Source of the DNA: Chrysemys picta bellii
Lineage: Eukaryota
NCBI RefSeq assembly: GCF_011386835.1
Contig: NC_088811.1
Span: forward strand, 18,848,001-18,912,000
Direction of reading: 5' to 3'
DNA length: 64,000 nucleotides
In this document: one piece after another, positions 20,726-37,453 of the stretch
How positions within the stretch are numbered: position 1 is the stretch's first letter
Layout of the letters: every line of letters begins with the position of its first letter
Notes under the pieces: generated by a model
What the model was told of the DNA's origin: nothing
The model's database searches: none
Seen by the model: only the letters and a program-made list of their open reading frames with translations
Made by a program: the position numbers and the translations under genes

Positions 20726-20912
20726 GGGGAGGGATAGCTCAGTGGTTTGAGCATTGGCCTGCTAAACCCAGGGTTGTGAGTTCAATCCTTGAGGGGGTCA
20801 TTTAGGGATCTGGGGCAAAAATCTGATCTGTCTGGGGATTGGTCCTGCTTTGAGCAGGGGGTTGGACTAGATGACCTCCTGAGGTCCCTTCCAACCCTCA
20901 TATTCTATGATC
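20726..20912 (+). mobile_element. Tortoise Pol III SINE (tRNA-derived head, CR1-derived tail)
   Basis: GGGGAGGGATAGCTCAGTGGTTTGAGCATTGGCCTGCTAAACCCAGGGTTGTGAGTTCAATCC (A and B boxes) and the CR1 tail GAGGTCCCTTCCAACCC..ATTCTATGAT. Confidence 0.95.
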
Positions 20913-21178: not shown

Positions 21179-21378
21179 GGGGAGGGATAACTCAGTGGTT
21201 TGAGCATTGGCCTGCTAAACCCAGGGTTGTGAGTTCAATCCTTGAGGGGGCCACTTGGGGATCTGGGGCAAAATCAGTACTTGGTCCTGCTAGTGAAGGC
21301 AGGGGGCTGGACTCGATGACCTTTCAAGGTCCCTTCCAGTTCTAGGAGATGGGATATCTCCATTTATTATTATTATTA
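21179..21378 (+). mobile_element. Tortoise Pol III SINE, second subfamily
   Basis: Nearly the same tRNA head as 20726 but a different tail (TAGTGAAGGCAGGGGGCTGGACTCGATGACCTTTCAAGG..GGGATATCTCC) ending in (ATT)n. Confidence 0.95.
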
Positions 21379-21620: not shown

Positions 21621-23105
21621 GGACTTAAAAGGGGCAGCATGAGCGGGGCCACATGCCTGGCCCACAGCTCCACCGCTGGGAGCCCAGTGGGCTGGGGGAG
21701 CCAGGACCTGGGGGGCAGCCTGGATCCAAGTGGGGAGCGGGGCAGGTGCAGTTGCATTGTGGGGTGTGACCTTTAAAACTTCAGCCGTGACTCTGGAACC
21801 AGCTGTAAATCTGACAAAGACGGAAAGAGTTTATGCTCTCAGAGCCTGCCAGAGAATGCACCTCACATACAATTCCCTTCACTGACACCATCCACAATCT
21901 CAGTGCTAACCAGACTCTGCAAATCAAGTTCTGCACTAAAAGAACAGATGAGAAAGTACCACGCTGTTTGTCCACACCTCGCAGGTGTGTTCCAGGTGCT
22001 GCATTTGAGCACCTAGTTGTTCTCCTTGGACATGCTGAGCTCCATACCAGTCAGGGAAATAAGACTTCACACTACTTTAGTACTTTCCACTATTTCATTC
22101 TGTTCTAGTCAGGCTCCTTATACTGCACCCATCACCATGATATCCAGTGCCAAATCCCTCTGGGAGAAAACACAGAAAACATCCACCCCTGAAATGCAGC
22201 CACCTCTGGAGTGGAGCGTGACAGCAGTTTTATTGGGCATGCCAAGACTCCACAAGAAGTAAAGAGCACTAGACCCAACTGAAGCTGCAGACCAGGAGAG
22301 TGCACTTGTCCAGAGGGAAGCTTGGCCAGAATCCTGGGGTAAACAGACTGAATGAGAGTCCTGCTGAGCACAGAGGCTGGGCTGTGCACAGGTGCACAAA
22401 GCGATTGTGTTTTTCTATGGGAGCTAGGCTGACTGGACACCAGTTATCATCTTCAAAGCATGGAGCTCACACTCCACGACGCTCCACCACAGCTGGCTCC
22501 GCTGCTTTGCACCTGAGCTGATGAGAGAGTCAATCTCAGAAGGCCCCAGCCCACCTGAATGGAGAAATGTGGCGCTCTCACCCGGAGAATGGCCAGACTG
22601 CAGCTGCCACGGATTCCCCGAGTGAGGGTCCATCCCACGTACACCCTGCCCCTGGCTCCCGGAGCTTCCCCCTACAGCTTTTTAGGGCAAGAGCTAGGGG
22701 CCCTCATGTTCTGCAGACCTGCCTGCCCACGGCTCATTTCCTGGCAGTGCCTTGGGAGCGTCTCCAGAACTTGGCAGGTCCAGTTTACTGGTTCCTGCTC
22801 AGCAGCTTTTCGGCTGCAGGAAATCAAAGGGGGGAAGGAATACCACTGCCCACACCTAGGAGATGTGGGTGGGCTGTGACAGGAACGTCTCTTTCCCTGT
22901 AATCCACATCAGAAGTGTGGGAACACTTGGAGTCAGGTGGAGGGAAGAGTTCAGAGCCAACAAACCCACTGCAAGAGCCACACAACCACCGGCAGCTTTT
23001 TACTCCATGATTTACTAGGGCTGCGTGCTGCTCCTTCCCAGAGCAGGCGGGATCTGTCTGCACACAGAGCAAACTGTCTCTGGAATGCGGCTGCTGCCGC
23101 GCTAA

Positions 23106-23283
23106 GGCCTTGTCTACACTACGAGAGTAGTTCGATTTTACTTGCATCGAATTTTTGTAATCGATATTGCAAAGTCGAGCGTGTGTGTCCACACTAAGGA
23201 CAGTAATTCGACTTTGTGCGTCCACACTAACGGTGATAGCGTCGACATTCGAAGCGGTGCACTGTGGTCAGCTATCCCACAGT
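23106..23283 (+). repeat. Left TIR and subterminal motif array
   Basis: TIR 23106-23121, seven TCGA cores (23132-23252), GTCCACACTA twice (about 23187 and 23220), and AGCTATCCCACAGT at 23270-23283. Confidence 0.9.
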
Positions 23284-23483
23284 TCCCGCAGTCCCCTCTG
23301 CCCATTGGAATTCTGGGTGTAGCCGGCAATGCCTTCTGGGTAACAAAATGAGTCGAGGGTGCTTTTGGGAAACTGTCGTCATCCGTCCATCACTCCCGCC
23401 CTCCCTCCCTGAAAGCGCCGGCGGGAAAACAGTTCGCGCGCTTTTCCAGTCATTGACAGCGCGGACGCCACTGTACTCCGAGC

Positions 23484-24767
23484 ATGGAGCCCGCTGCGAC
23501 CATCGCTGCAGTTGTGGCCGCTCTCAACGTCTCGCAGCTTATCATAAAGGTTTCCCTGAGGCAGATGCAGAAAAGTCAGGCAAGGAGGCTACGGCACCGC
23601 GGTGATGTCCTGAAGTCTGAGAGTAGCACAGACCTGTCAGAAAGCAGGCGACCCAGCGCCGAGGACATCACAGTGGCAATGGGTCATGTTGATGCCGTGG
23701 AACGGCGATTCTGGGCACGGGAGACAAGCACTGAGTGGTGGGACCGCATAGTGCTGCAGGTCTGGGATGAATCCCAGTGGCTGCGAAACTTTCGCATGCG
23801 GAAGGGAACTTTCCTGGAACTTTGTGAGTTGCTGTCCCCTGCCCTGAAGCGCAGTGACACCCGGTTGCGAGCTGCACTGAGTGTACAGAAGCGAGTGGCC
23901 ATAGCCCTGTGGAAGCTTGCAACGCCAGACAGCTACCGGTCAGTCGCGAACCAGTTTGGGGTGGGCAAATCTACCGTGGGGGTTGTTGTGATGCAAGTAG
24001 CCAAGGCAATCGTTGATGTACTGCTGCCAAAGGTAGTGACCCTGGGAAACGTGGAGGCGATCATAGATGGTTTCGCAGCGATGGGATTCCCAAACTGCGG
24101 TGGGGCCATAGATGGAACTCACATCCCTATCCTGGCACCGGACCACCAGGCCACCCAGTACATTAACCGAAAGGGCTACTTTTCCATGGTGCTGCAAGCA
24201 CTGGTGGACCACAGGGGACGTTTTACCAACATCTACGTGGGATGGCCGGGCAAGGTTCATGACGCTCGTGTTTTCAGGAACTCTGGTCTGTTTAGACGGC
24301 TGCAACAAGGTATTTACTTCCCGGACCACAAAATAACTGTTGGGGATGTGGAGATGCCTATAGTCATCCTCGGGGACCCAGCCTACCCGCTAATGCCCTG
24401 GCTCATGAAGCCCTATACTGGCGCCCTGGACACTGAAAAAGAACTCTTCAACTACCGGCTGAGCAAGTGCAGAATGGTGGTGGAGTGTGCTTTTGGCCGT
24501 CTCAAGGGGAGATGGAGAAGCTTACTGACTCGCTGTGATCTCAGCGAAACCAATATCCCCATTGTTATAGCAGCTTGCTGTGTGCTCCACAATCTCTGTG
24601 AGAGCAAGGGGGAGACCTTTCTGGCGGGGTGGGAGGTTGAGGAAAATAGCCTGGCTGGTGATTACTCACAGCCAGACAGCCGGGCGATTAGAAGAGACCA
24701 GCGGGAAGCGCTGTGCATCCGGGAGGCTTTGAAAGCAAAGTTCCTGAGTGAGCAGGGTAACCTGTGA
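23484..24767 (+). CDS. Harbinger DDE transposase, 427 aa, uninterrupted
   Basis: FRM...F..LC, HTH region (ALWKLATPDSYRSVANQFGVGKST), and catalytic motifs AIDGTH, KVHDARVF, LGDPAYP, VVECAFGRLKGRW. This is the element-encoded transposase, not the domesticated HARBI1 gene. Confidence 0.97.
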   Translation: MEPAATIAAVVAALNVSQLIIKVSLRQMQKSQARRLRHRGDVLKSESSTDLSESRRPSAEDITVAMGHVDAVERRFWARETSTEWWDRIVLQVWDESQWLRNFRMRKGTFLELCELLSPALKRSDTRLRAALSVQKRVAIALWKLATPDSYRSVANQFGVGKSTVGVVVMQVAKAIVDVLLPKVVTLGNVEAIIDGFAAMGFPNCGGAIDGTHIPILAPDHQATQYINRKGYFSMVLQALVDHRGRFTNIYVGWPGKVHDARVFRNSGLFRRLQQGIYFPDHKITVGDVEMPIVILGDPAYPLMPWLMKPYTGALDTEKELFNYRLSKCRMVVECAFGRLKGRWRSLLTRCDLSETNIPIVIAACCVLHNLCESKGETFLAGWEVEENSLAGDYSQPDSRAIRRDQREALCIREALKAKFLSEQGNL

Positions 24768-24882
24768 TTTTATAGTTTGTGTACTGAGAAGCTAAACCTG
24801 CCCCCGTTTCTTTACCCAGGTAATGTTGACTATCCTATCCAGTTACATACCCCCTTCACCCCCCCTCCAACACACGTGTCGA

Positions 24883-24888
24883 AATAAA
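24883..24888 (+). terminator. Putative poly(A) signal of the transposase
   Basis: AATAAA about 115 nt after the stop codon. Confidence 0.6.
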
Positions 24889-25439
24889 AATAGTTCTACT
24901 TTGTTAAAGCACACCGTTTTCTTTAATACTGTTTTAGCGGGAATTTTTTAAAACTGGGACGCAGACTGTGGTGCGGGGCGGGTCTAGTGTTGTGATGCGA
25001 ATGCAGCTTCTAAACTCAAGGATTGACAGGCTCCGCTGCGGTGGGATGCTTGTTTCAACGGAGCCTGTCACCCCTCCTGATCGGGACTGTGTGTATGGGA
25101 GGTCTATTTGACTTTGTGGCAGGGGGAGGACGGTTACAGATCCCATGCTGTGTGGCTCTGTGATCCTGTCTAAGGACCGGCGCTTAAGATCTGTAACTGC
25201 CCTCCCCCGCCACAAAGTCACAGAGCAACCCACCCCCCCCAACATTACATCAAAACAACCTCCCAGACTAACCGGGGCAACTAGTCACTGCATCACTGCA
25301 CTGTGTATGTGCCCTGCTGCTGTGCCTGCCCCCGACTATGTACCCTGCCAAAGGAGACTGTCCTGTCCAATTTCCAACCCCCTTTCCCCTCCTCCTCCAA
25401 AAGAACATGATTGAAACAGTAGTTAACAGAAACGAATTT

Positions 25440-25445
25440 TTTATT
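25440..25445 (-). terminator. Putative poly(A) signal of the Myb/SANT gene
   Basis: TTTATT on + (AATAAA on -) about 70 nt after the stop at 25517. Confidence 0.6.
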
Positions 25446-25516
25446 ATCAACTACACATGGCATTGGGAGGTGAAACTTGGACGTGGGCTTGTGTCAGGCG
25501 GGAAGGAAAGAACTTT

Positions 25517-25992
25517 TCAAATTTTGGGAAATGAGAGCCTTCTGCTACTAGAGCTCTCTGCAGGGGTGGAGTGAGAGTTAGCAGGGACTCTGCCGCCTCT
25601 CCTTCTTTGCACTTTGGGTGAGGTGGGTATGGGACTTGGTGGCGGGGGAGGGCGGTTAGAGATGGACTGCAGCGGGGCTCTGTCCTCCTGCCTCCGTTCC
25701 TGCAGAACATCCACAAGGCGCCGGAGCGTGTCCGTTTGCTCCCTCAGTAGTCCAAGCAGCGTTTGAGTCGCCTGCTGGTCTTCCTGCCGCCACCTCTCCT
25801 CCCGATCCATGTTGGCTTGGTGCATTCGGGTCAAGTTCTCCCGCCACTGGGTCTGCTGTGCTGCCTGGGCTTGGGAAGAGGCCATAAGCTCAGAGAACAT
25901 GTCCTCCCGTGTCCTCTTCTTCCTACGCCTAATCCGCGCTAGCCTCTGGGAGTGTGATTCCAGGCTAGGTTGTGAGACAGTCGCAGACGGGG
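25517..25992 (-). CDS. Myb/SANT-like protein, exon 2 (basic segment and coiled coil)
   Basis: Acceptor ...CCCTTTTTCCCATTTCCACAG|CC CCG TCT. Phase 1 matches exon 1. Encodes RLARIRRRKKRTREDMFSELM...EERWRQEDQQ...SFPKI*. Confidence 0.9.
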
Positions 25993-26205
25993 CTGTGGAA
26001 ATGGGAAAAAGGGAGTGAATTCCTCTGAAAGATAAATGTAGTTGTGAACAAAGAACATAGTCTTTCTCTGTGAACAAGACCATGCACAGCACCTTTCACA
26101 TGCGCACTCAGCACAAGGTCGAATTCTCGGCCTTCGCATTCTGTGCCTGGGGTCTTGAACAGCACATTTGAGAAGCGAGGCAGCACAACGGAATTTCTGT
26201 TGCAG

Positions 26206-26214
26206 GCAGACATG
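26206..26214 (+). CDS. Candidate 9-nt micro-exon carrying the ATG of ORF3
   Basis: TTTCTGTTGCAG|GCAGACATG|GTAAGC. The ATG at 26212-26214 joins in frame to GTC ACC ATG GCC at 26483. Confidence 0.55.
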
Positions 26215-26482
26215 GTAAGCCGTACACTTGTGGCAGTTTAAAACTTTTATATTACCACTGGCCTCATTTCACATTTAAATCAATGTCAGTCCCTGCTGCC
26301 AGCAATCCGGCAAGCGGGAACTCTGCCCCTGTCCCACCCCCTCGCGGCTGTCCCCGGGAATGATCCCTTTCGGCTGCCCCTCTCCCGCCTCCACCGCGTG
26401 GCTGCAAACCAGCGGTGACAGTTCTGTAAAGGAACGGGAAAGCAGTCCCAACACTAACATTCCCCTACCTAATTAAAAGCAG

Positions 26483-26779
26483 GTCACCATGGCCGACATC
26501 ACCCTGATGAGGATCTCCGAGAGCGACAAAGAGAGAATGCTCCGGGAAAGCCTCCAAAGACCAGGGCCGTATGCCGCCCTGCTGTGCAGAGCAATGATCC
26601 CCGAGTACTTGATAATCTCGTGGCGCGGCAACGTGTCGTACTTCGGAGGACCCAATAAGGCCGCTCTCCCCAAGAACCTCATGCAACGGCTTTCAAGTTA
26701 CCTCCAGGAGAGCTTCATCGAGATGTCCCAGGAGGATTACTGCTCTATCCCCGCACATATAGACCGCATTTTACTGTAG
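26483..26779 (+). CDS. Third Harbinger ORF (96 aa from ATG 26489, 99 aa if spliced); putative stand-alone BEN-domain protein
   Basis: Open frame with CACCATGG Kozak context, branch point CACTAAC at 26452-26458, AG at 26481-26482, and downstream AATAAA at 26957-26962. The residue pattern YAALL...NVSYFGGPNKAAL...LSSYLQESF..MSQEDY..I...ID resembles BEN domains by eye only. Confidence 0.7.
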   Translation, partial: VTMADITLMRISESDKERMLRESLQRPGPYAALLCRAMIPEYLIISWRGNVSYFGGPNKAALPKNLMQRLSSYLQESFIEMSQEDYCSIPAHIDRILL

Positions 26780-26986
26780 CTGCAGTAGCAGGGAATACAC
26801 AGTAGAGCGGCTTGTGCAGGACAATCACTGAAAACCGGACATTGCTAGATTTCTTTTCAAAACTTGCACTGCCCCTTACTAAACCGTTAAGCGCCTAGGG
26901 CACACTAATCATGAACAACCCATTCTTTTAATTGTTAATATTCCTGTTTTGTTAAAAATAAATGTTTAGATGTTTACAACACTTAC

Positions 26987-27563
26987 TGGCTGATCCTTCA
27001 CCAGATTCTGTGTCCGGGGTAATGGCTGGGGACGCTTCGTAGGGGATCTCTGTAAGGGTGATGAAGAGATCCTGGCTGTCGGGGAAATCAGCGTTGTGAG
27101 AGCTGCCAACTGCCTCGCCCTCCTCATCTCCTTCCTCATCTTCCCCGTCCCCTAACATGTCTGAGGAACCGGCCGTGGACAGTATCCCATCCTCAGAGTC
27201 CACGGTCACTGGTGGGGTAGTGGTGGCGGCAGCACCGAGGATGGAATGCAGTGCCTCGTAGAAACGGGATGTCTGGGGATGGGATCCGGAGCGTCCGTTT
27301 GCCTCTTTGGTCTTCTGGTAGCCTTGTCTCAGCTCCTTGATTTTCACGCGGCACTGCGTTGCATCCCGGCTGTATCCTCTCTCTGCCATGTCTTTAGAGA
27401 TCTTCTCGTAGATCTTTGCATTCCTTCTTTTGGATCGCAGCTCGGAAAGCACGGACTCATCGCCCCACACAGCGATGAGATCCAAGACTTCACGATCAGT
27501 CCATGCTGGGGCTCTCTTTCTATTCCCAGACTGCACGGCCATCACTGCTGGAGAGCTCTGCAT
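26987..27563 (-). CDS. Myb/SANT-like (MSANTD/trihelix-type) DNA-binding protein, exon 1
   Basis: MQSSPAVMAVQSGNRKRAPAWTDREVLDLIAVWG...NAKIYEKIS..M.ERGYSRDATQCRVKIKELRQGY. Donor GCCA|GTAAGT. Exon lengths 577+476 nt give 351 codons including the stop. Confidence 0.93.
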
Positions 27564-27730
27564 CGTTGCCAGTGCTGCTGTGCTCGCCACGATGTCCAGA
27601 CAGGAAATGAGATTCAAACTGGCCAGACAGGAAAAGGAATTCAAATTCAAATTTTCCCGGGGCTTTTCCTGTGTGGCTGGTCAGAGCATCCGAGCTCGCA
27701 CTGCTGTCCAGAGCGTCAACAGAGTGGTGC

Positions 27731-27959
27731 ACTGTGGGATAGCTCCCGGAGCTATTAGCGTCGATTTCCATCCACACCTAGCCTAATTCGACATGGCCAT
27801 GTCGAATTTAGCGCTACTCCCCTCGTCGGGGAGGAGTACAGAAGTCGAATTAAAGAGACCTCTATGTCGAACTAAATAGCATCGCAGTGTGGACGGGTGC
27901 AGGGTTAATTCGATTTAACGGCGCTAACTTCGACATAAACGCCTAGTGTAGACCAGGCC
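27731..27959 (-). repeat. Right subterminal motif array and TIR
   Basis: ACTGTGGGATAGCT at 27731-27744 (reverse complement of 23270-23283), seven TCGA cores (27761-27933), AGTGTGGAC, and TIR 27944-27959. Confidence 0.9.
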
Positions 27960-29519
27960 TAAGAATGGGGCTCCCTGGGGAGACGGCTTTGCTGAGTTAT
28001 GCCAAGCCAGCTGCACCGAGCAGCTACAGCCGGGAAAGTAATTTCCCAGGTGGCTTTACAGTGCAATGGAGATCAGGGTGCCTGCATCACACCCTTGTTA
28101 CAAGGCCCTAATGGAGAGATTTACAGGCGAAGTTGCTTGGGCAGCTCCCTGGTTCATTAAGTACCATAATAAACCCTCTTGTCATAACACATACCTGGCT
28201 AGTCACTGAGAACACCTGGGCCCTGAAAGCTGCTCTCAGGGAGGAGGGGGAAAAGGGGTCATAGCCCCACCTCCTCCCACAGATTTCTCCACACACTCGC
28301 TTCTAACTGAGCAGGGAGGGGAGAATCCCTCAGATATAGAAGCCAGCGGGAAGATCCAAGGAAAGGGCACGTCCATGCAGAGAAACATACACCGCATGCA
28401 CTCACTTACACACACACACACACACACAGGAGTACTTGCACAGCACCAACGCACATACTACCACAAGTACGTGCACATATGCACTGCCGTGTACAAACAC
28501 ACGTATGCAATATGCTTGCGTATACACACACACACACACACTCTTCTCCATGGCTGGGCATCAAGGCCAGAATATTTGACAATGTTTATTTTTAATTAAT
28601 ACAAACGTGTGAATGCATTCGGTGAACCTCTGCTACTTGAAATAATTCCTCCGCCTTTGGAGGCCGCACCACGGTACTGTACTGACCACTCACTTCCTCG
28701 CATCTAGTGGAACAAGTAAACAGATGTTGGGTGGCTGGGGCGGGTGAATCACTTCACCTGTTTGTTACACATTGTCACAGCTTTATAGATCATAAAAATC
28801 CACTAGCTGAATACTATTGGGGGGCAGCACTGTGTGTGCAGAGTTCAGTCCAGTCCCCAAGCCATGCAGGGATCCCCGGGGGAGCAGGGAGCGCAGAGGA
28901 GGCTGTGGAGAGACAAGTCTCCTAAGGTAAGAGCCATATTGCCCTGGAGAATGACAACCACCGACAGCCAGCTGACTGCACCTTGGCAGCTAACAAGGCT
29001 TTCAACTTCAGCTACAGCTTCCCTCCAATAACTTCCCAGCCAAATACAGCACGTTTGCCTGACGGGGACACAGGTGCTAACGCAGCCCACAGCCCACTAG
29101 TTGTGGCAGAAATGTGTTCCCAGAGGAAACCGCCCAGACTTGCTCCTCCGAGATCTCCGCAGCACATCCACAAGGTGGGTGTGAGGACGTGCTGGGGGAA
29201 TGGCCAGGTGCCAGACATCGCATGGGTGTGGCTCTCCTATTGACCAGCTCCCCCACCAGACAGGGACAGAGGGGTGAGGTGCTGGGGAACAAACAGGCTC
29301 TCATCACTTTCTGCGCCGAGGAGGTGCACGAGGCATAGCAGAGCCTGGGATCCAGCTTCAGAGGCCCGGACACGCAAGGATAAGCTGCAGCAGCGCAGGC
29401 GTATCTGGGGTCATGCCAGCTGTCAAGACTCTGACTCGCCACCTGGGCATGGAGGTGCCCAACCAAGAGATCAAAGGTCAATCTGCAGATTTATAGCTTA
29501 AGGCCAGAAGGGACCATTC

Positions 29520-36598: not shown

Positions 36599-37453
36599 CA
36601 ATGGCTCTCAACCTTTCCTGACCACTAACGGCCAATGGGAGCAGCTGGAGGCGGTGCCTGAAGCAACAGCCACACACCCCTGCGCCCCTCCTCCCCCAGG
36701 TTCCGTCCGCTTCCCGGAGCGGTGCAGGGGCAGGGCAGGCAGGCAGCCTGCCCTGTCCCCAGTGCGCGTTGGGCCGGAGCCCGCCCCCTGAACTCCCTCC
36801 TGCAGCCGAACCCCCTGTCCTGAGCCCCCTGCCGCACCTCGCACCCCTCCTGCACCCCAACCCCACACCCTGCCCTGAACCCCTTGCTGCACCCCGACCA
36901 CCTGCCCTGAACCCCCCCCGCTGCACCTCGCACGCCGACCCCCTGCCCTGAGCCCCCGCTGCACCCTGCACCCTGACCCACTGCCCTGAGCCCCCTGCCG
37001 TACCTCACACCCCTCCTGCACCCCAACCCCACCCCCCTGCCCTGAACCCCCTGCTGCACCCCGGCCCCCTGCCCTGAACCCCCCCCTGCTGCACCTCGCA
37101 CGCCGACCCCCTGCCCTGAGCCCCCGCTGCACCCTGTACCCTAACCCACTGCCCTGAGCCCCTGCTGCACCCTGACCCCGTGCCACACCCCTCACCCCTC
37201 CTGTACCCCACATCCCAACTCCCTGCCCTGAGCCCCCGCCACACCCCTCCTGCCCCCCCTGGGGGCAGGGAAGGGGCAGAGTTGGGATGGGGATTTCAGG
37301 GAAGGTTGGAAGAGCGGGGCGGGGCCTCATGGAAGGGGTAGAGTGGGGGCGGGGCCAAGGGCAGCGGGGGGAGAGGTGTCAGTAAATGAGGCCCTCGGGC
37401 CAATGTACTACTCCTCATGTGGCCCTCGTGGTCATTTGAGTTTGAAACCCCTG
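36599..37453. mobile_element. hAT (Charlie-like) non-autonomous element with internal C-rich tandem duplication
   Basis: Ends CAATGGCTCTCAACC and TTTGAAACCCCTG. A block of about 165 bp at about 36835 is repeated at about 37003. TSD weak (5/8). Confidence 0.7.

What the first reader, a model, noticed from the sequence alone, without database searches (positions are those of the whole stretch)
26206..26962. Hidden third gene in the Harbinger transposon: a BEN-domain-like protein nested antisense in the Myb intron
Seen in the sequence: a complete small gene on the + strand inside the 994-bp intron of the minus-strand Myb gene. It has a 9-nt exon AG|GCAGACATG|GTAAGC, a near-consensus branch point CACTAAC 25 nt before the AG at 26481, an in-frame join (M-V-T-MADITL...), 96 open codons, a TAG stop, and AATAAA at 26957. 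Established: characterised Harbinger/PIF elements such as Harbinger3_DR work as two-component systems of DDE transposase plus Myb/SANT protein. BEN (BANP, E5R, NAC1) domains are all-helical modules of about 80 aa that bind short, often palindromic or CpG-containing motifs. Inference: ORF3 fits the BEN pattern as I recall it from BANP. The helix YAALLCRAMI is followed by NVSxxGxxxKxxL, then helix LSSYLQESF, then MSQEDYxxIxxxID. That would be a three-component transposon with a stand-alone DNA-binding regulator, and a possible route by which BEN domains spread through vertebrate genomes. I do not know whether this ORF is already noted in Repbase or Dfam.
Basis: partly seen in the sequence, partly recalled or inferred. 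Interest (0 to 1): 0.9.

Follow-up and report, generated by a model that had tools for sequence, protein, structure and literature searches.

The report
Third, BEN-fold gene in Harbinger transposon
A turtle Harbinger "jumping gene", a type described as carrying two genes, carries a conserved third small gene hidden backwards inside an intron of its Myb gene. Its protein is predicted to fold like a BEN domain, which suggests one way this domain gets added to host genes.

Summary
Window 26489-26779 (+) is a 96-codon ORF inside the 994-nt intron (25993-26986) of the minus-strand Myb gene of an intact Harbinger element (23106-27959, TAA duplication). RNA contigs from four runs show that intron spliced.

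The ORF is a real gene.
- It sits in the same place in at least eight other diverged turtle Harbinger copies, and the seven copies checked (six turtle, one gecko host gene) are all open.
- Pairwise dN/dS is 0.17-0.47 (one pair 0.62), like the transposase and Myb genes.
- The acceptor, the poly(A) signal and an upstream ATG|GTRAG donor are conserved even where the intron no longer aligns.

The BEN reading holds at fold level.
- The AlphaFold2 model has pLDDT 96.
- It matches BEND3 BEN4 at Z 12 and BANP, BEND6, Insv and NACC1 at Z 6-10. The next unrelated chain scores Z 3.
- Pfam BEN finds nothing in the ORF itself and only sub-threshold hits in distant relatives.
- The nearest Swiss-Prot structure is the Xenopus germ-plasm protein Pat (TM 0.89).

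Not shown:
- No spliced + strand RNA was seen.
- The "9-nt exon" is probably the 3' end of a longer first exon.
- DNA binding is untested, and the usual recognition helix is acidic here.

RefSeq isoforms of TEDC1, CDK6 and RAB3C end in this exon. First readers flagged the same gene at 12 other places in this genome, none checked. I found no paper describing it.

The parts
23106..27959 (.). Whole Harbinger element (4854 bp). TIRs are at 23106-23121 and 27944-27959 (15 of 16 match). The TAA target-site duplication is at 23103-23105 and 27960-27962.
23484..24767 (+). Transposase CDS, 427 aa, intact, with a DDE_Tnp_4 domain. Its own AATAAA lies at 24883.
   Evidence: Pfam E 3.3e-37, profile 1-158 of 158; poly(A) signal
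25517..25992 (-). Myb gene exon 2 (C-terminal half, coiled-coil-like). A minus-strand poly(A) signal lies at about 25440.
25993..26986 (-). Myb intron, 994 nt, GT..AG. It holds the donor, intron, coding exon and poly(A) signal of ORF3.
   Evidence: The joint 25992->26987 appears in contigs of all four runs laid. The spliced CDS is open for 350 aa.
26987..27563 (-). Myb gene exon 1 CDS with the Myb/SANT-like domain.
   Evidence: Pfam Myb_DNA-bind_4 E 1.1e-21
26206..26214 (+). 3' end of ORF3 exon 1. Its last three bases are the probable initiator ATG (26212-26214), followed by the donor GTAAGC (26215-26220). Where exon 1 starts is unknown.
   Evidence: ATG|GTAAG or ATG|GTGAGT is kept 130-450 nt upstream of the ORF in 7 of 9 turtle copies; L004 has CTG|GTAAGC and L002 has no donor.
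26215..26479 (+). ORF3 intron with branch point CACTAAC at 26452-26458, a pyrimidine tract, and a tandem acceptor: AG at 26478-79 or 26481-82.
   Evidence: All seven copies compared have a Y-tract plus CAG acceptor 6-18 nt before the domain. Gene models join at '|QVTM'. No RNA joint was seen.
26480..26779 (+). ORF3 coding exon. The reading frame is open from the acceptor, the internal ATG is at 26489 in ACCATGG, the 96-aa domain follows, and the TAG stop is at 26777-79.
26780..26962 (+). ORF3 3' UTR, ending with AATAAA at 26957-26962, 25 nt inside the Myb intron border.
   Evidence: All seven copies compared have AATAAA or ATTAAA 47-265 nt after the stop.

Best explanation
ORF3 is a genuine third gene of this turtle Harbinger lineage.

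Shown:
- A 96-residue coding exon sits on the + strand inside the intron of the minus-strand Myb gene.
- It keeps the same position in Harbinger copies whose introns otherwise no longer align.
- It stays open in every copy checked and evolves under purifying selection as strong as that on the transposase and Myb genes.
- It folds, with high predicted confidence, as a five-helix BEN domain.

Inferred from conserved signals:
- It is made from its own small two-exon transcript.
- Exon 1 ends in the initiator ATG (26212-14) followed by a consensus donor.
- A 265-nt intron is removed, and the mRNA ends at AATAAA (26957) just before the Myb exon.

Inferred function:
- It is a small, probably dimeric, BEN-fold accessory factor of the element.
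- It acts either by binding DNA or chromatin, at the element or at targets, or by binding partner proteins.
- My odds are DNA or chromatin binding about 40%, protein scaffold or adaptor like its nearest structural relative Xenopus Pat about 35%, and other about 25%.

Side effect: the exon is a ready-made terminal exon (acceptor, open frame, poly(A) signal). Copies inside host introns get spliced onto host genes.
For: Same layout in other turtles. The order transposase(+), Myb exon 2(-), ORF3(+), Myb exon 1(-) recurs in Malaclemys L001, Mauremys L004, Chelonia L003 (two copies) and L007, and Chrysemys L011. L005 and L008 hold part of it.

Conserved island. Between the window and L001, only the three genes align by blastn. 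The conserved island in the intron is 26477-26799, which is the ORF plus its acceptor.

Selection.
- Seven of seven copies checked are open.
- dN/dS is 0.17-0.47 in 16 measurable pairs, and the bootstrap upper bound is below 1. One turtle-gecko pair gives 0.62 with a bound of 1.02.
- pS is 0.45-0.84, near saturation, for all but the closely related L001-L003b pair.
- The transposase gives 0.25-0.38 and Myb 0.17-0.39 for the same copies.
- Only frame +0 has no stops and a low ratio.

Splice and poly(A) signals are conserved across subfamilies.

Family size: 51 representative homologues.

Fold.
- AlphaFold2 pLDDT 96, pTM 0.87. ESMFold2 without an alignment gives pLDDT 92-93.
- Foldseek puts BEN entries on top in PDB (BEND3 BEN4: TM 0.72, rmsd 2.3, probability 1.0).
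- VIA Z: BEND3 BEN4 12.0, BEN3 10.4, BANP 9.2, BEND6 7.6, Insv 6.6, NACC1 6.3, then 3.1 for the first unrelated chain.
- AFDB clusters are mostly named 'BEN domain-containing'.
- The Atlas feature search gives BEN clusters at 0.93 with 199 of 256 shared features.
- Pfam BEN is the commonest, though sub-threshold, hit in distant members.
- Near-identical relatives of member P0029 are named BEN domain-containing by UniRef.

Dimer. ipSAE is 0.44 against a best control of 0.01. That mark was reached by 21 of 30 proteins solved as pairs of one chain and 0 of 23 solved as single chains. In eukaryotes it was 17 of 29, but only 1 of the 7 with no older solved relative, so the pass may come from memory of solved BEN dimers. 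The runs share at least 87% of contacts and the partner's pLDDT is at least 92.

Acceptor used in gene models. TEDC1 X5, CDK6 X2, RAB3C X3 and a GlyT1-like model all end in this exon. In L011 the RAB3C exon joins a 5'-truncated Harbinger copy 15.7 kb downstream.
Against: - No + strand spliced joint (26214 to 26480 or 26483) appears in contigs of four probable RNA runs. Contigs run unspliced across 26065-26578. Contigs drop rare forms, so this is not proof of absence.
- The start of exon 1 and any promoter are unknown.
- Pfam BEN does not hit the ORF at E<=10, and a family profile finds no BEN chain in PDB by sequence.
- The domain is neutral (pI 6.6).
- Its last helix, the DNA-reading helix of solved BEN domains (PMC10206803), has net charge -2 and lacks the family's conserved Asn. 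The predicted dimer contact also uses that helix. This argues against canonical BEN-type DNA reading in this subfamily.
- dN/dS between dead copies mixes selection on the active lineage with neutral decay after insertion.
- Whether Repbase or Dfam already annotate this ORF could not be checked.
Confidence: 0.75

Rival explanations
1. ORF3 is not an independent gene. It is an alternative 3' terminal exon of the + strand transposase transcript, producing a truncated transposase N-terminus fused to the BEN-like domain, in the way some transposons make repressor isoforms.
For: - Gene models P0006, P0007 and P0014 join transposase N-terminal residues to the ORF3 exon.
- The acceptor is strong enough to capture distant host exons.
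- ORF3 is on the same strand as the transposase.
Against: - Those three are unverified gene predictions, two of them from an early Chelonia annotation.
- The RNA contigs show no joint from 23xxx-24xxx into 26480.
- The transposase has its own AATAAA 116 nt after its stop.
- A conserved ATG|GTRAG donor lies 130-450 nt upstream of the exon in 7 of 9 copies and explains the acceptor more simply.
- The internal ATG has a perfect Kozak context.
Confidence: 0.1
2. ORF3 is a passenger. It is a host BEN-like exon, from a Pat-like gene, picked up by one Harbinger lineage, with no role in transposition. It persists because it is harmless, or because its exon-trap architecture or some host-directed effect is what is selected.
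For: - Host-gene-like relatives exist without any transposase or Myb gene nearby: a gecko 3-exon gene next to a KDM4B-like gene and Xenopus Pat.
- The PIF/Harbinger literature describes two genes as sufficient (PMC4482050, PMC2836001).
- dS of ORF3 can differ strongly from dS of the transposase in the same pair of copies (1.29 against 0.30), as expected for a module with its own history.
Against: - Purifying selection persisted while synonymous sites saturated across several Harbinger subfamilies. It was as strong as on the two essential genes.
- Start, donor, acceptor and poly(A) signal are all conserved.
- A useless passenger would have decayed.
Confidence: 0.12
3. The conserved island is not protein-coding. 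It would be a cis-acting RNA or DNA element of the Myb intron, or an antisense exon, and the ORF and BEN-like model would be accidental.
For: - The island lies in an intron of a gene that is expressed and spliced.
- No peptide or + strand RNA evidence was obtained.
Against: - Differences concentrate at third codon positions (25/18/45 and 16/13/28 by position).
- All five other frames contain stops and give higher ratios.
- The ORF is open in 7 of 7 copies at 36-76% protein identity.
- Two independent predictors give a confident fold.
Confidence: 0.02

Closest known systems
BEN domains (Pfam PF10523), especially BEND3 BEN4 (PDB 7W27, 7V9I), and BEN-solo factors such as Drosophila Insv (4IX7)
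   Same: - Same five-helix fold with a short beta element: Z 12.0, rmsd 2.2 over 87 residues, 21% identity to BEND3 BEN4.
- Stand-alone size, like the BEN-solo proteins.
- Predicted to dimerise.
- The conserved basic G-x-N-K-x-x-L-P-R-N segment matches the part of the Pfam BEN profile that distant members hit, profile positions about 21-76.
   Different: - No Pfam BEN hit for the ORF itself.
- Neutral protein with an acidic last helix in this subfamily, whereas solved BEN-DNA complexes use a basic surface and that helix (PMC10206803).
- Encoded by a DNA transposon rather than a host chromatin gene or a virus.
Xenopus laevis Protein Pat (Xpat, UniProt O73622), a germ-plasm component
   Same: Nearest Swiss-Prot structural match. 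Residues 187-280 align with TM 0.89, rmsd 1.4 and 26% identity over 95 residues, Foldseek E 4.5e-7. As in the gecko gene and the chimeric turtle isoforms, the domain is at the C-terminus.
   Different: Pat is a 293-aa host protein described in cytoplasmic germ-plasm particles (PMC3827131), not a transposon protein. The papers I read name no BEN domain in it. I could not fetch its sequence, so this link rests on two predicted structures only.
Canonical two-gene PIF/Harbinger elements (for example Harbinger3_DR; transposase plus Myb/SANT protein)
   Same: DDE_Tnp_4 transposase, Myb/SANT-like second protein, short TIRs and a 3-bp TAA duplication.
   Different: A third conserved gene is nested antisense in the Myb intron. 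Surveys of the superfamily describe two ORFs only (PMC4482050, PMC9179366, PMC9392472).
C. elegans LIN-14, recognised as a BEN-domain factor only through predicted structure (PMC10080584)
   Same: A precedent for a BEN domain that sequence profiles miss and structure prediction reveals.
   Different: LIN-14 is a host transcription factor with demonstrated DNA binding. Nothing has been demonstrated for ORF3.

Membership tests
BEN domain (Pfam PF10523 / SMART / PROSITE BEN) | Sequence-profile match above the curated threshold | tested here: not met
   - ORF3 has no Pfam family at E<=10.
- Distant family members hit BEN only below the gathering score of 23.2 bits: P0029 at 20.8 bits, P0056 at 17.6, P0057 at 14.0, and 3 of the 31 members of A1.
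- The A1 profile finds no BEN chain in PDB by sequence.
- UniRef names P0061 and P0062, which are 96-97% identical to P0029, 'BEN domain-containing'. ORF3 to P0029 is E 9.7e-9, which gives an indirect chain.
BEN domain (Pfam PF10523 / SMART / PROSITE BEN) | BEN fold: a compact bundle of five helices, with or without a short beta hairpin, superposable on solved BEN domains | tested here: met
   - Predicted model with pLDDT 96: helices 11-20, 25-36, 39-45, 62-75 and 81-95.
- VIA Z is 6.3-12.0 to 14 BEN entries covering residues 5-96. The next entry scores 3.1.
- Foldseek probability is 1.0.
- AFDB clusters and Atlas features point the same way.
BEN domain (Pfam PF10523 / SMART / PROSITE BEN) | Basic DNA-binding surface, with the last helix as the major-groove reading helix | tested here: inconclusive
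   - The last helix has net charge -2 in the window's subfamily and +1 to +4 in other members.
- The loop at residues 46-64 is basic (+2 to +7) in most members and is the best conserved part.
- Whole-domain pI is 6.6.
- No residue-level superposition on a DNA complex was available.
BEN domain (Pfam PF10523 / SMART / PROSITE BEN) | Sequence-specific DNA binding | not testable with these tools
   Needs EMSA, SELEX or DAP-seq.
PIF/Harbinger transposon | DDE transposase of the DDE_Tnp_4 / PIF type | tested here: met
   Pfam PF13359, E 3.3e-37, full profile, open 427-aa ORF.
PIF/Harbinger transposon | Second gene for a Myb/SANT-like DNA-binding protein | tested here: met
   PF13837, E 1.1e-21. Two exons, spliced in RNA contigs of four runs, 350 aa open.
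PIF/Harbinger transposon | Terminal inverted repeats flanked by a 3-bp TWA target-site duplication | tested here: met
   The TIRs start GGCCTTGTCTACACTA and GGCCTGGTCTACACTA, with TAA on both sides.
Independent protein-coding gene | Own spliced, polyadenylated transcript and protein product | tested here: inconclusive
   The signals are conserved, and gene models in four host genes use the acceptor. No + strand joint appears in the contigs laid. There are no strand, start, end or peptide data.

The most novel reading that the evidence does not exclude
The Harbinger-borne BEN-like exon works as a natural exon trap (acceptor, open frame, poly(A) signal). By this route it has repeatedly donated a C-terminal BEN-like domain to vertebrate host genes. 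The Xenopus germ-plasm gene Pat and the gecko three-exon gene would then be domesticated descendants of this transposon gene (or, conversely, its source). That would give an 'orphan' germ-plasm protein a transposon origin and the BEN superfamily a mobile vector in vertebrates.
Probability: 0.3. Interest if true: 0.85.

Novelty: new variant of a known kind. Interest (0 to 1): 0.72.

Why it matters
PIF/Harbinger elements are the textbook two-protein DNA transposons. HARBI1, NAIF1 and the MSANTD genes were domesticated from those two proteins.

A third gene would mean three things. It is conserved and selected, it lies antisense in an intron of the second gene, and its start codon is split off at an exon end.
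- Annotation pipelines miss short nested genes in transposons.
- Some Harbinger lineages need, or profit from, an extra factor.
- Reconstitution experiments with two proteins may be incomplete for these families.

The BEN fold links a mobile element to a domain family known from chromatin insulators and CpG-reading factors.

The terminal-exon architecture gives a concrete, already visible mechanism for adding this domain to host proteins (the RefSeq isoforms of TEDC1, CDK6 and RAB3C).

The close structural match to Xenopus Pat offers a testable origin for a germ-plasm protein for which the papers I read name no domain.

Tried and rejected
Searches that gave nothing
- Pfam on ORF3 alone: nothing at E<=10.
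- phmmer and a family-profile hmmsearch against PDB sequences: only chance-level rows (an NP chain at E 0.98, TFIIA gamma at E 0.18) and no BEN chain.
- Word-indexed search with the family profile: 15 hits, none with a precomputed Pfam BEN. The tool's length window of 53-168 aa limits this search.

RNA
- Contigs of four runs laid over the whole element show the Myb splice. They show no joint 26214->26480 or 26483, and none from the transposase region into the ORF3 exon.
- I did not use bin depth as expression evidence. It is higher over the ORF3 exon than over the intron parts beside it, but conserved parts attract contigs from other copies.

Readings I considered and dropped
- Transposase-ORF3 fusion models (P0006, P0007, P0014) as evidence for alternative splicing of the transposase. 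They are unverified predictions.
- The antisense and shifted frames as the coding frame.
- A bare 9-nt internal micro-exon. Its upstream AG is absent in L001 and L007.

Context and look-ups
- The fish relatives showed no Harbinger beside the croaker BEN-like gene.
- An exact look-up of P0003 is not on record.

Literature
- Searches for Harbinger plus BEN, BEN plus transposon, and a third ORF found nothing relevant.
Full report
**1. What is in the sequence**

The window holds a complete Harbinger element at 23106-27959.
- It has 16-nt terminal inverted repeats (15 of 16 matching) and a TAA duplication on both sides.
- On the + strand it carries an open 427-aa transposase (23484-24767; Pfam DDE_Tnp_4, E 3.3e-37) with its own AATAAA at 24883.
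- On the minus strand it carries a two-exon Myb/SANT gene (exon 1 at 26987-27563, exon 2 at 25517-25992; Myb_DNA-bind_4, E 1.1e-21).
- The intron between the two exons is 25993-26986, 994 nt, GT..AG. Contigs from all four sequencing runs I laid on the element join 25992 to 26987. The joined reading frame is open for 350 aa.

**2.

All are where stated.
- ttgcag|GCAGACATG|GTAAGC, with the nine bases at 26206-26214.
- CACTAAC at 26452-26458.
- A pyrimidine tract and AG at 26481-82.
- ATG at 26489 in ACCATGG.
- 96 codons, then TAG at 26777-79.
- AATAAA at 26957-62.

A 96-codon ORF is not remarkable by itself in this window. The case rests on comparison with other copies.

**3. Conservation and selection**

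An exhaustive phmmer search found 51 representative proteins at E<=1e-3, 18 of them at E<=1e-10.

*Same position.* I fetched the DNA of several of them. The order transposase(+), Myb exon 2(-), ORF3(+), Myb exon 1(-) recurs in these copies:
- Malaclemys terrapin (L001).
- Mauremys reevesii (L004).
- Chelonia mydas (L003 with two copies, and L007; L005 holds part of it).
- Chrysemys picta bellii (L011).
- A Logan contig (L008) holds ORF3 with Myb exon 1.

*Conserved island.* Between the window and L001, blastn aligns only the three genes. The island inside the intron runs from 26477 to 26799, which is exactly the ORF plus its acceptor.

*Open and selected.*
- All seven copies I extracted, six turtle copies and one gecko host gene, are open to a stop at the same place.
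- Pairwise dN/dS (Nei-Gojobori) is 0.17-0.47, and the bootstrap upper bound is below 1. The one exception is a turtle-gecko pair at 0.62 with an upper bound of 1.02.
- Synonymous sites are near saturation (pS 0.45-0.84) in all but the closely related L001-L003b pair.
- For the same copies the transposase gives 0.25-0.38 and Myb exon 1 gives 0.17-0.39. ORF3 is as constrained as the two canonical genes.
- Differences pile up at third codon positions.
- Of the six frames, only +0 is free of stops and has a low ratio. The constraint is on a + strand protein, not on an RNA element or an antisense exon.

**4. Gene structure**

*Acceptor and poly(A) signal.* Every one of the seven copies compared has a pyrimidine tract and a CAG acceptor 6-18 nt before the domain. 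Every one has AATAAA or ATTAAA 47-265 nt after the stop.

*Donor.* A consensus donor preceded by ATG lies 130-450 nt upstream in seven of nine turtle copies.
- ATG|GTAAG in the window, L011, L001 and L003b.
- ATG|GTGAGT in the distant subfamily (L005, L007, L008).
- L004 has CTG|GTAAGC, and L002 has lost the donor.

In the distant subfamilies the rest of the intron does not align, so this is conservation of a signal, not of neighbouring sequence. The donor is in phase 0 with the exon.

- Gene models that use the acceptor all read '...|Q-V-T-M'. The AG used is 26478-79, and the exon starts at 26480.
- The AG in front of the nine bases is missing in L001 and L007. The nine bases are more likely the end of a longer first exon than a micro-exon.

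The start of that exon and any promoter remain unknown. About 220 nt separate the Myb acceptor from the ORF3 donor, both here and in L007.

**5. RNA evidence**

The contigs show the Myb splice but no + strand joint into the ORF3 exon. Unspliced contigs cross 26065-26578. Contigs lose rare forms and carry no strand information, so this neither shows nor excludes an ORF3 mRNA.

Indirect evidence that the acceptor works comes from RefSeq-type isoforms.
- TEDC1 X5 and RAB3C X3 in Chrysemys, CDK6 X2 in Malaclemys and a GlyT1-like model in Mauremys all end in this exon.
- In L011 the RAB3C exon is joined to a 5'-truncated Harbinger copy 15.7 kb downstream.
- In L001 the 123-aa model starts in an exon outside the element.
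- That such isoforms need transcript support is my knowledge of the NCBI pipeline. I did not check it here.

**6. The fold**

With the 31-sequence alignment A1, AlphaFold2 gives pLDDT 96 and pTM 0.87: five helices and a short strand pair. ESMFold2 without the alignment gives pLDDT 92-93.

| Search | Result |
|---|---|
| Foldseek, PDB | 18 of the top 20 rows are BEN entries; best is BEND3 BEN4, TM 0.72, rmsd 2.3, probability 1.0 |
| VIA-align | Z 12.0 and 11.9 (BEND3 BEN4), 10.4 (BEN3), 9.2 (BANP), 7.6 (BEND6), 6.6 (Insv), 6.3 (NACC1), then 3.1 for the first unrelated chain |
| AFDB clusters | after the family's own members, almost all 'BEN domain-containing' |
| Atlas language-model features | BEN clusters at 0.93, 199 of 256 features shared |

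At sequence level the link is weak.
- There is no Pfam hit for the ORF.
- Five distant members give sub-threshold BEN hits, the best at 20.8 bits against a cut-off of 23.2.
- UniRef uses the name 'BEN domain-containing' for near-identical relatives of member P0029.

I therefore file ORF3 as a divergent BEN-fold protein. Formal profile membership is not met. LIN-14 is a precedent for a BEN domain recognised only from predicted structure (PMC10080584).

**7. Function**

Nothing is shown. Evidence bearing on DNA binding:
- Solved BEN-DNA complexes use a basic surface and put the last helix into the major groove (PMC10206803).
- Here the domain is neutral (pI 6.6).
- The last helix has net charge -2 and Asp where most relatives have Asn.
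- The best conserved and consistently basic part is the loop and helix start at residues 46-64.

A homodimer is supported by the complex test.
- ipSAE is 0.44 against a best control of 0.01.
- That mark was reached by 21 of 30 proteins solved as pairs of one chain and 0 of 23 solved as single chains.
- In eukaryotes it was 17 of 29, but only 1 of the 7 with no older solved relative, so the pass may come from memory of solved BEN dimers.
- The runs agree in at least 87% of contacts and the partner's pLDDT is at least 92.
- The small contact (F52, Q81, E82, Y84, C85, P88) uses the start of the last helix.

The nearest Swiss-Prot structure is not a chromatin factor. It is Xenopus Pat, a germ-plasm particle protein (TM 0.89, rmsd 1.4, 26% identity; PMC3827131).

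My odds are DNA or chromatin binding about 40%, protein adaptor or scaffold about 35%, and other about 25%.

**8. Beyond turtles**

- A gecko gene of three exons ends in a related exon. It lies beside a KDM4B-like gene, with no transposase or Myb gene nearby.
- Croaker has a multi-copy 226-238-aa gene with the domain and no Harbinger beside it.
- Loach and catfish 'ZMYM4' models contain the domain.

Whether the transposon gave the domain to hosts or took it from one is open.

**9. Novelty**

- Surveys of PIF/Harbinger describe two ORFs (PMC4482050, PMC9179366, PMC9392472).
- Only two papers in the library mention both Harbinger and BEN domain. Judging from their titles and single mentions, neither connects them.
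- I could not consult Repbase or Dfam.
- First readers of this scan flagged the same gene at 12 other places in this genome (eight were listed), all unchecked. Those notes are not independent evidence, but they suggest many copies.

**10. Verdict**

This is a real, selected third gene with a BEN fold, nested antisense in the Myb intron.

Not shown are its transcript, its start site and its activity. The 'DNA-binding regulator' label is a hypothesis with some evidence against the canonical binding mode. It is a new variant of a known kind of transposon.

Noticed in passing
L011:1-192 versus window 23106-23297: The left end of the window's element matches another copy in the Chrysemys picta bellii assembly at 99.5% identity on the opposite strand. 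The family has near-identical copies and is probably young. The window is likely from this species or a close relative.
   Followed up: partly
window 26489-26776 and 23484-24764 versus L004: Synonymous divergence differs sharply between modules of the same pair of copies. For window versus Mauremys L004, ORF3 has dS 1.29, against 0.30 for the transposase and 0.42 for Myb exon 1. This suggests recombination between subfamilies, or a separate history for the ORF3 module.
   Followed up: no
L004:22903-22912: The Mauremys copy has TCTCGCGAGA about 110 nt upstream of the ORF3 donor. From my own knowledge this is the palindromic CGCG promoter motif bound by BANP. It is absent at the same place in the window and in L001.
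   Followed up: no
P0025 residues 1388-1467 (Triplophysa ZMYM4 model); also P0054 and P0059 (Clarias): Fish 'ZMYM4' gene models contain the ORF3-like domain just before the QRICH1 and DUF3504 (Crypton-derived) domains, with E 1.9e-9 to ORF3. Human ZMYM proteins did not appear in the fold search, so this may be an exonised insertion.
   Followed up: no
L010:7334-8014 (Larimichthys crocea): A multi-copy gene of 226-238 aa has a coiled-coil-like N-terminus and the BEN-like C-terminus (P0062, 16 member sequences). It is also found fused in gene models to a LINE-type endonuclease and to DLG1. It looks like another mobile carrier of the domain and is not flanked by Harbinger genes.
   Followed up: partly
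L006:6001-12858 (Gekko kuhli): A three-exon, 276-aa gene has a basic, low-complexity N-terminus and a very basic ORF3-like last exon (pI 11.8). It lies upstream of a KDM4B-like gene, and one gecko model fuses the two. It has the same architecture as Xenopus Pat.
   Followed up: partly
window 23106-23500 and 27700-27959: CpG observed/expected is about 1.0-1.2 at the left end of the element and 0.95 at 27706-27905 near the right end, against 0.3-0.7 inside. This fits a young element, or ends that stay unmethylated.
   Followed up: no
window 20726-20820 and 21179-21273; window 36799-37274: Two tRNA-like SINE heads 96% alike lie 453 nt apart, and there is a C-rich array with units spaced mostly about 38 nt apart. 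Neither is related to the finding.
   Followed up: no
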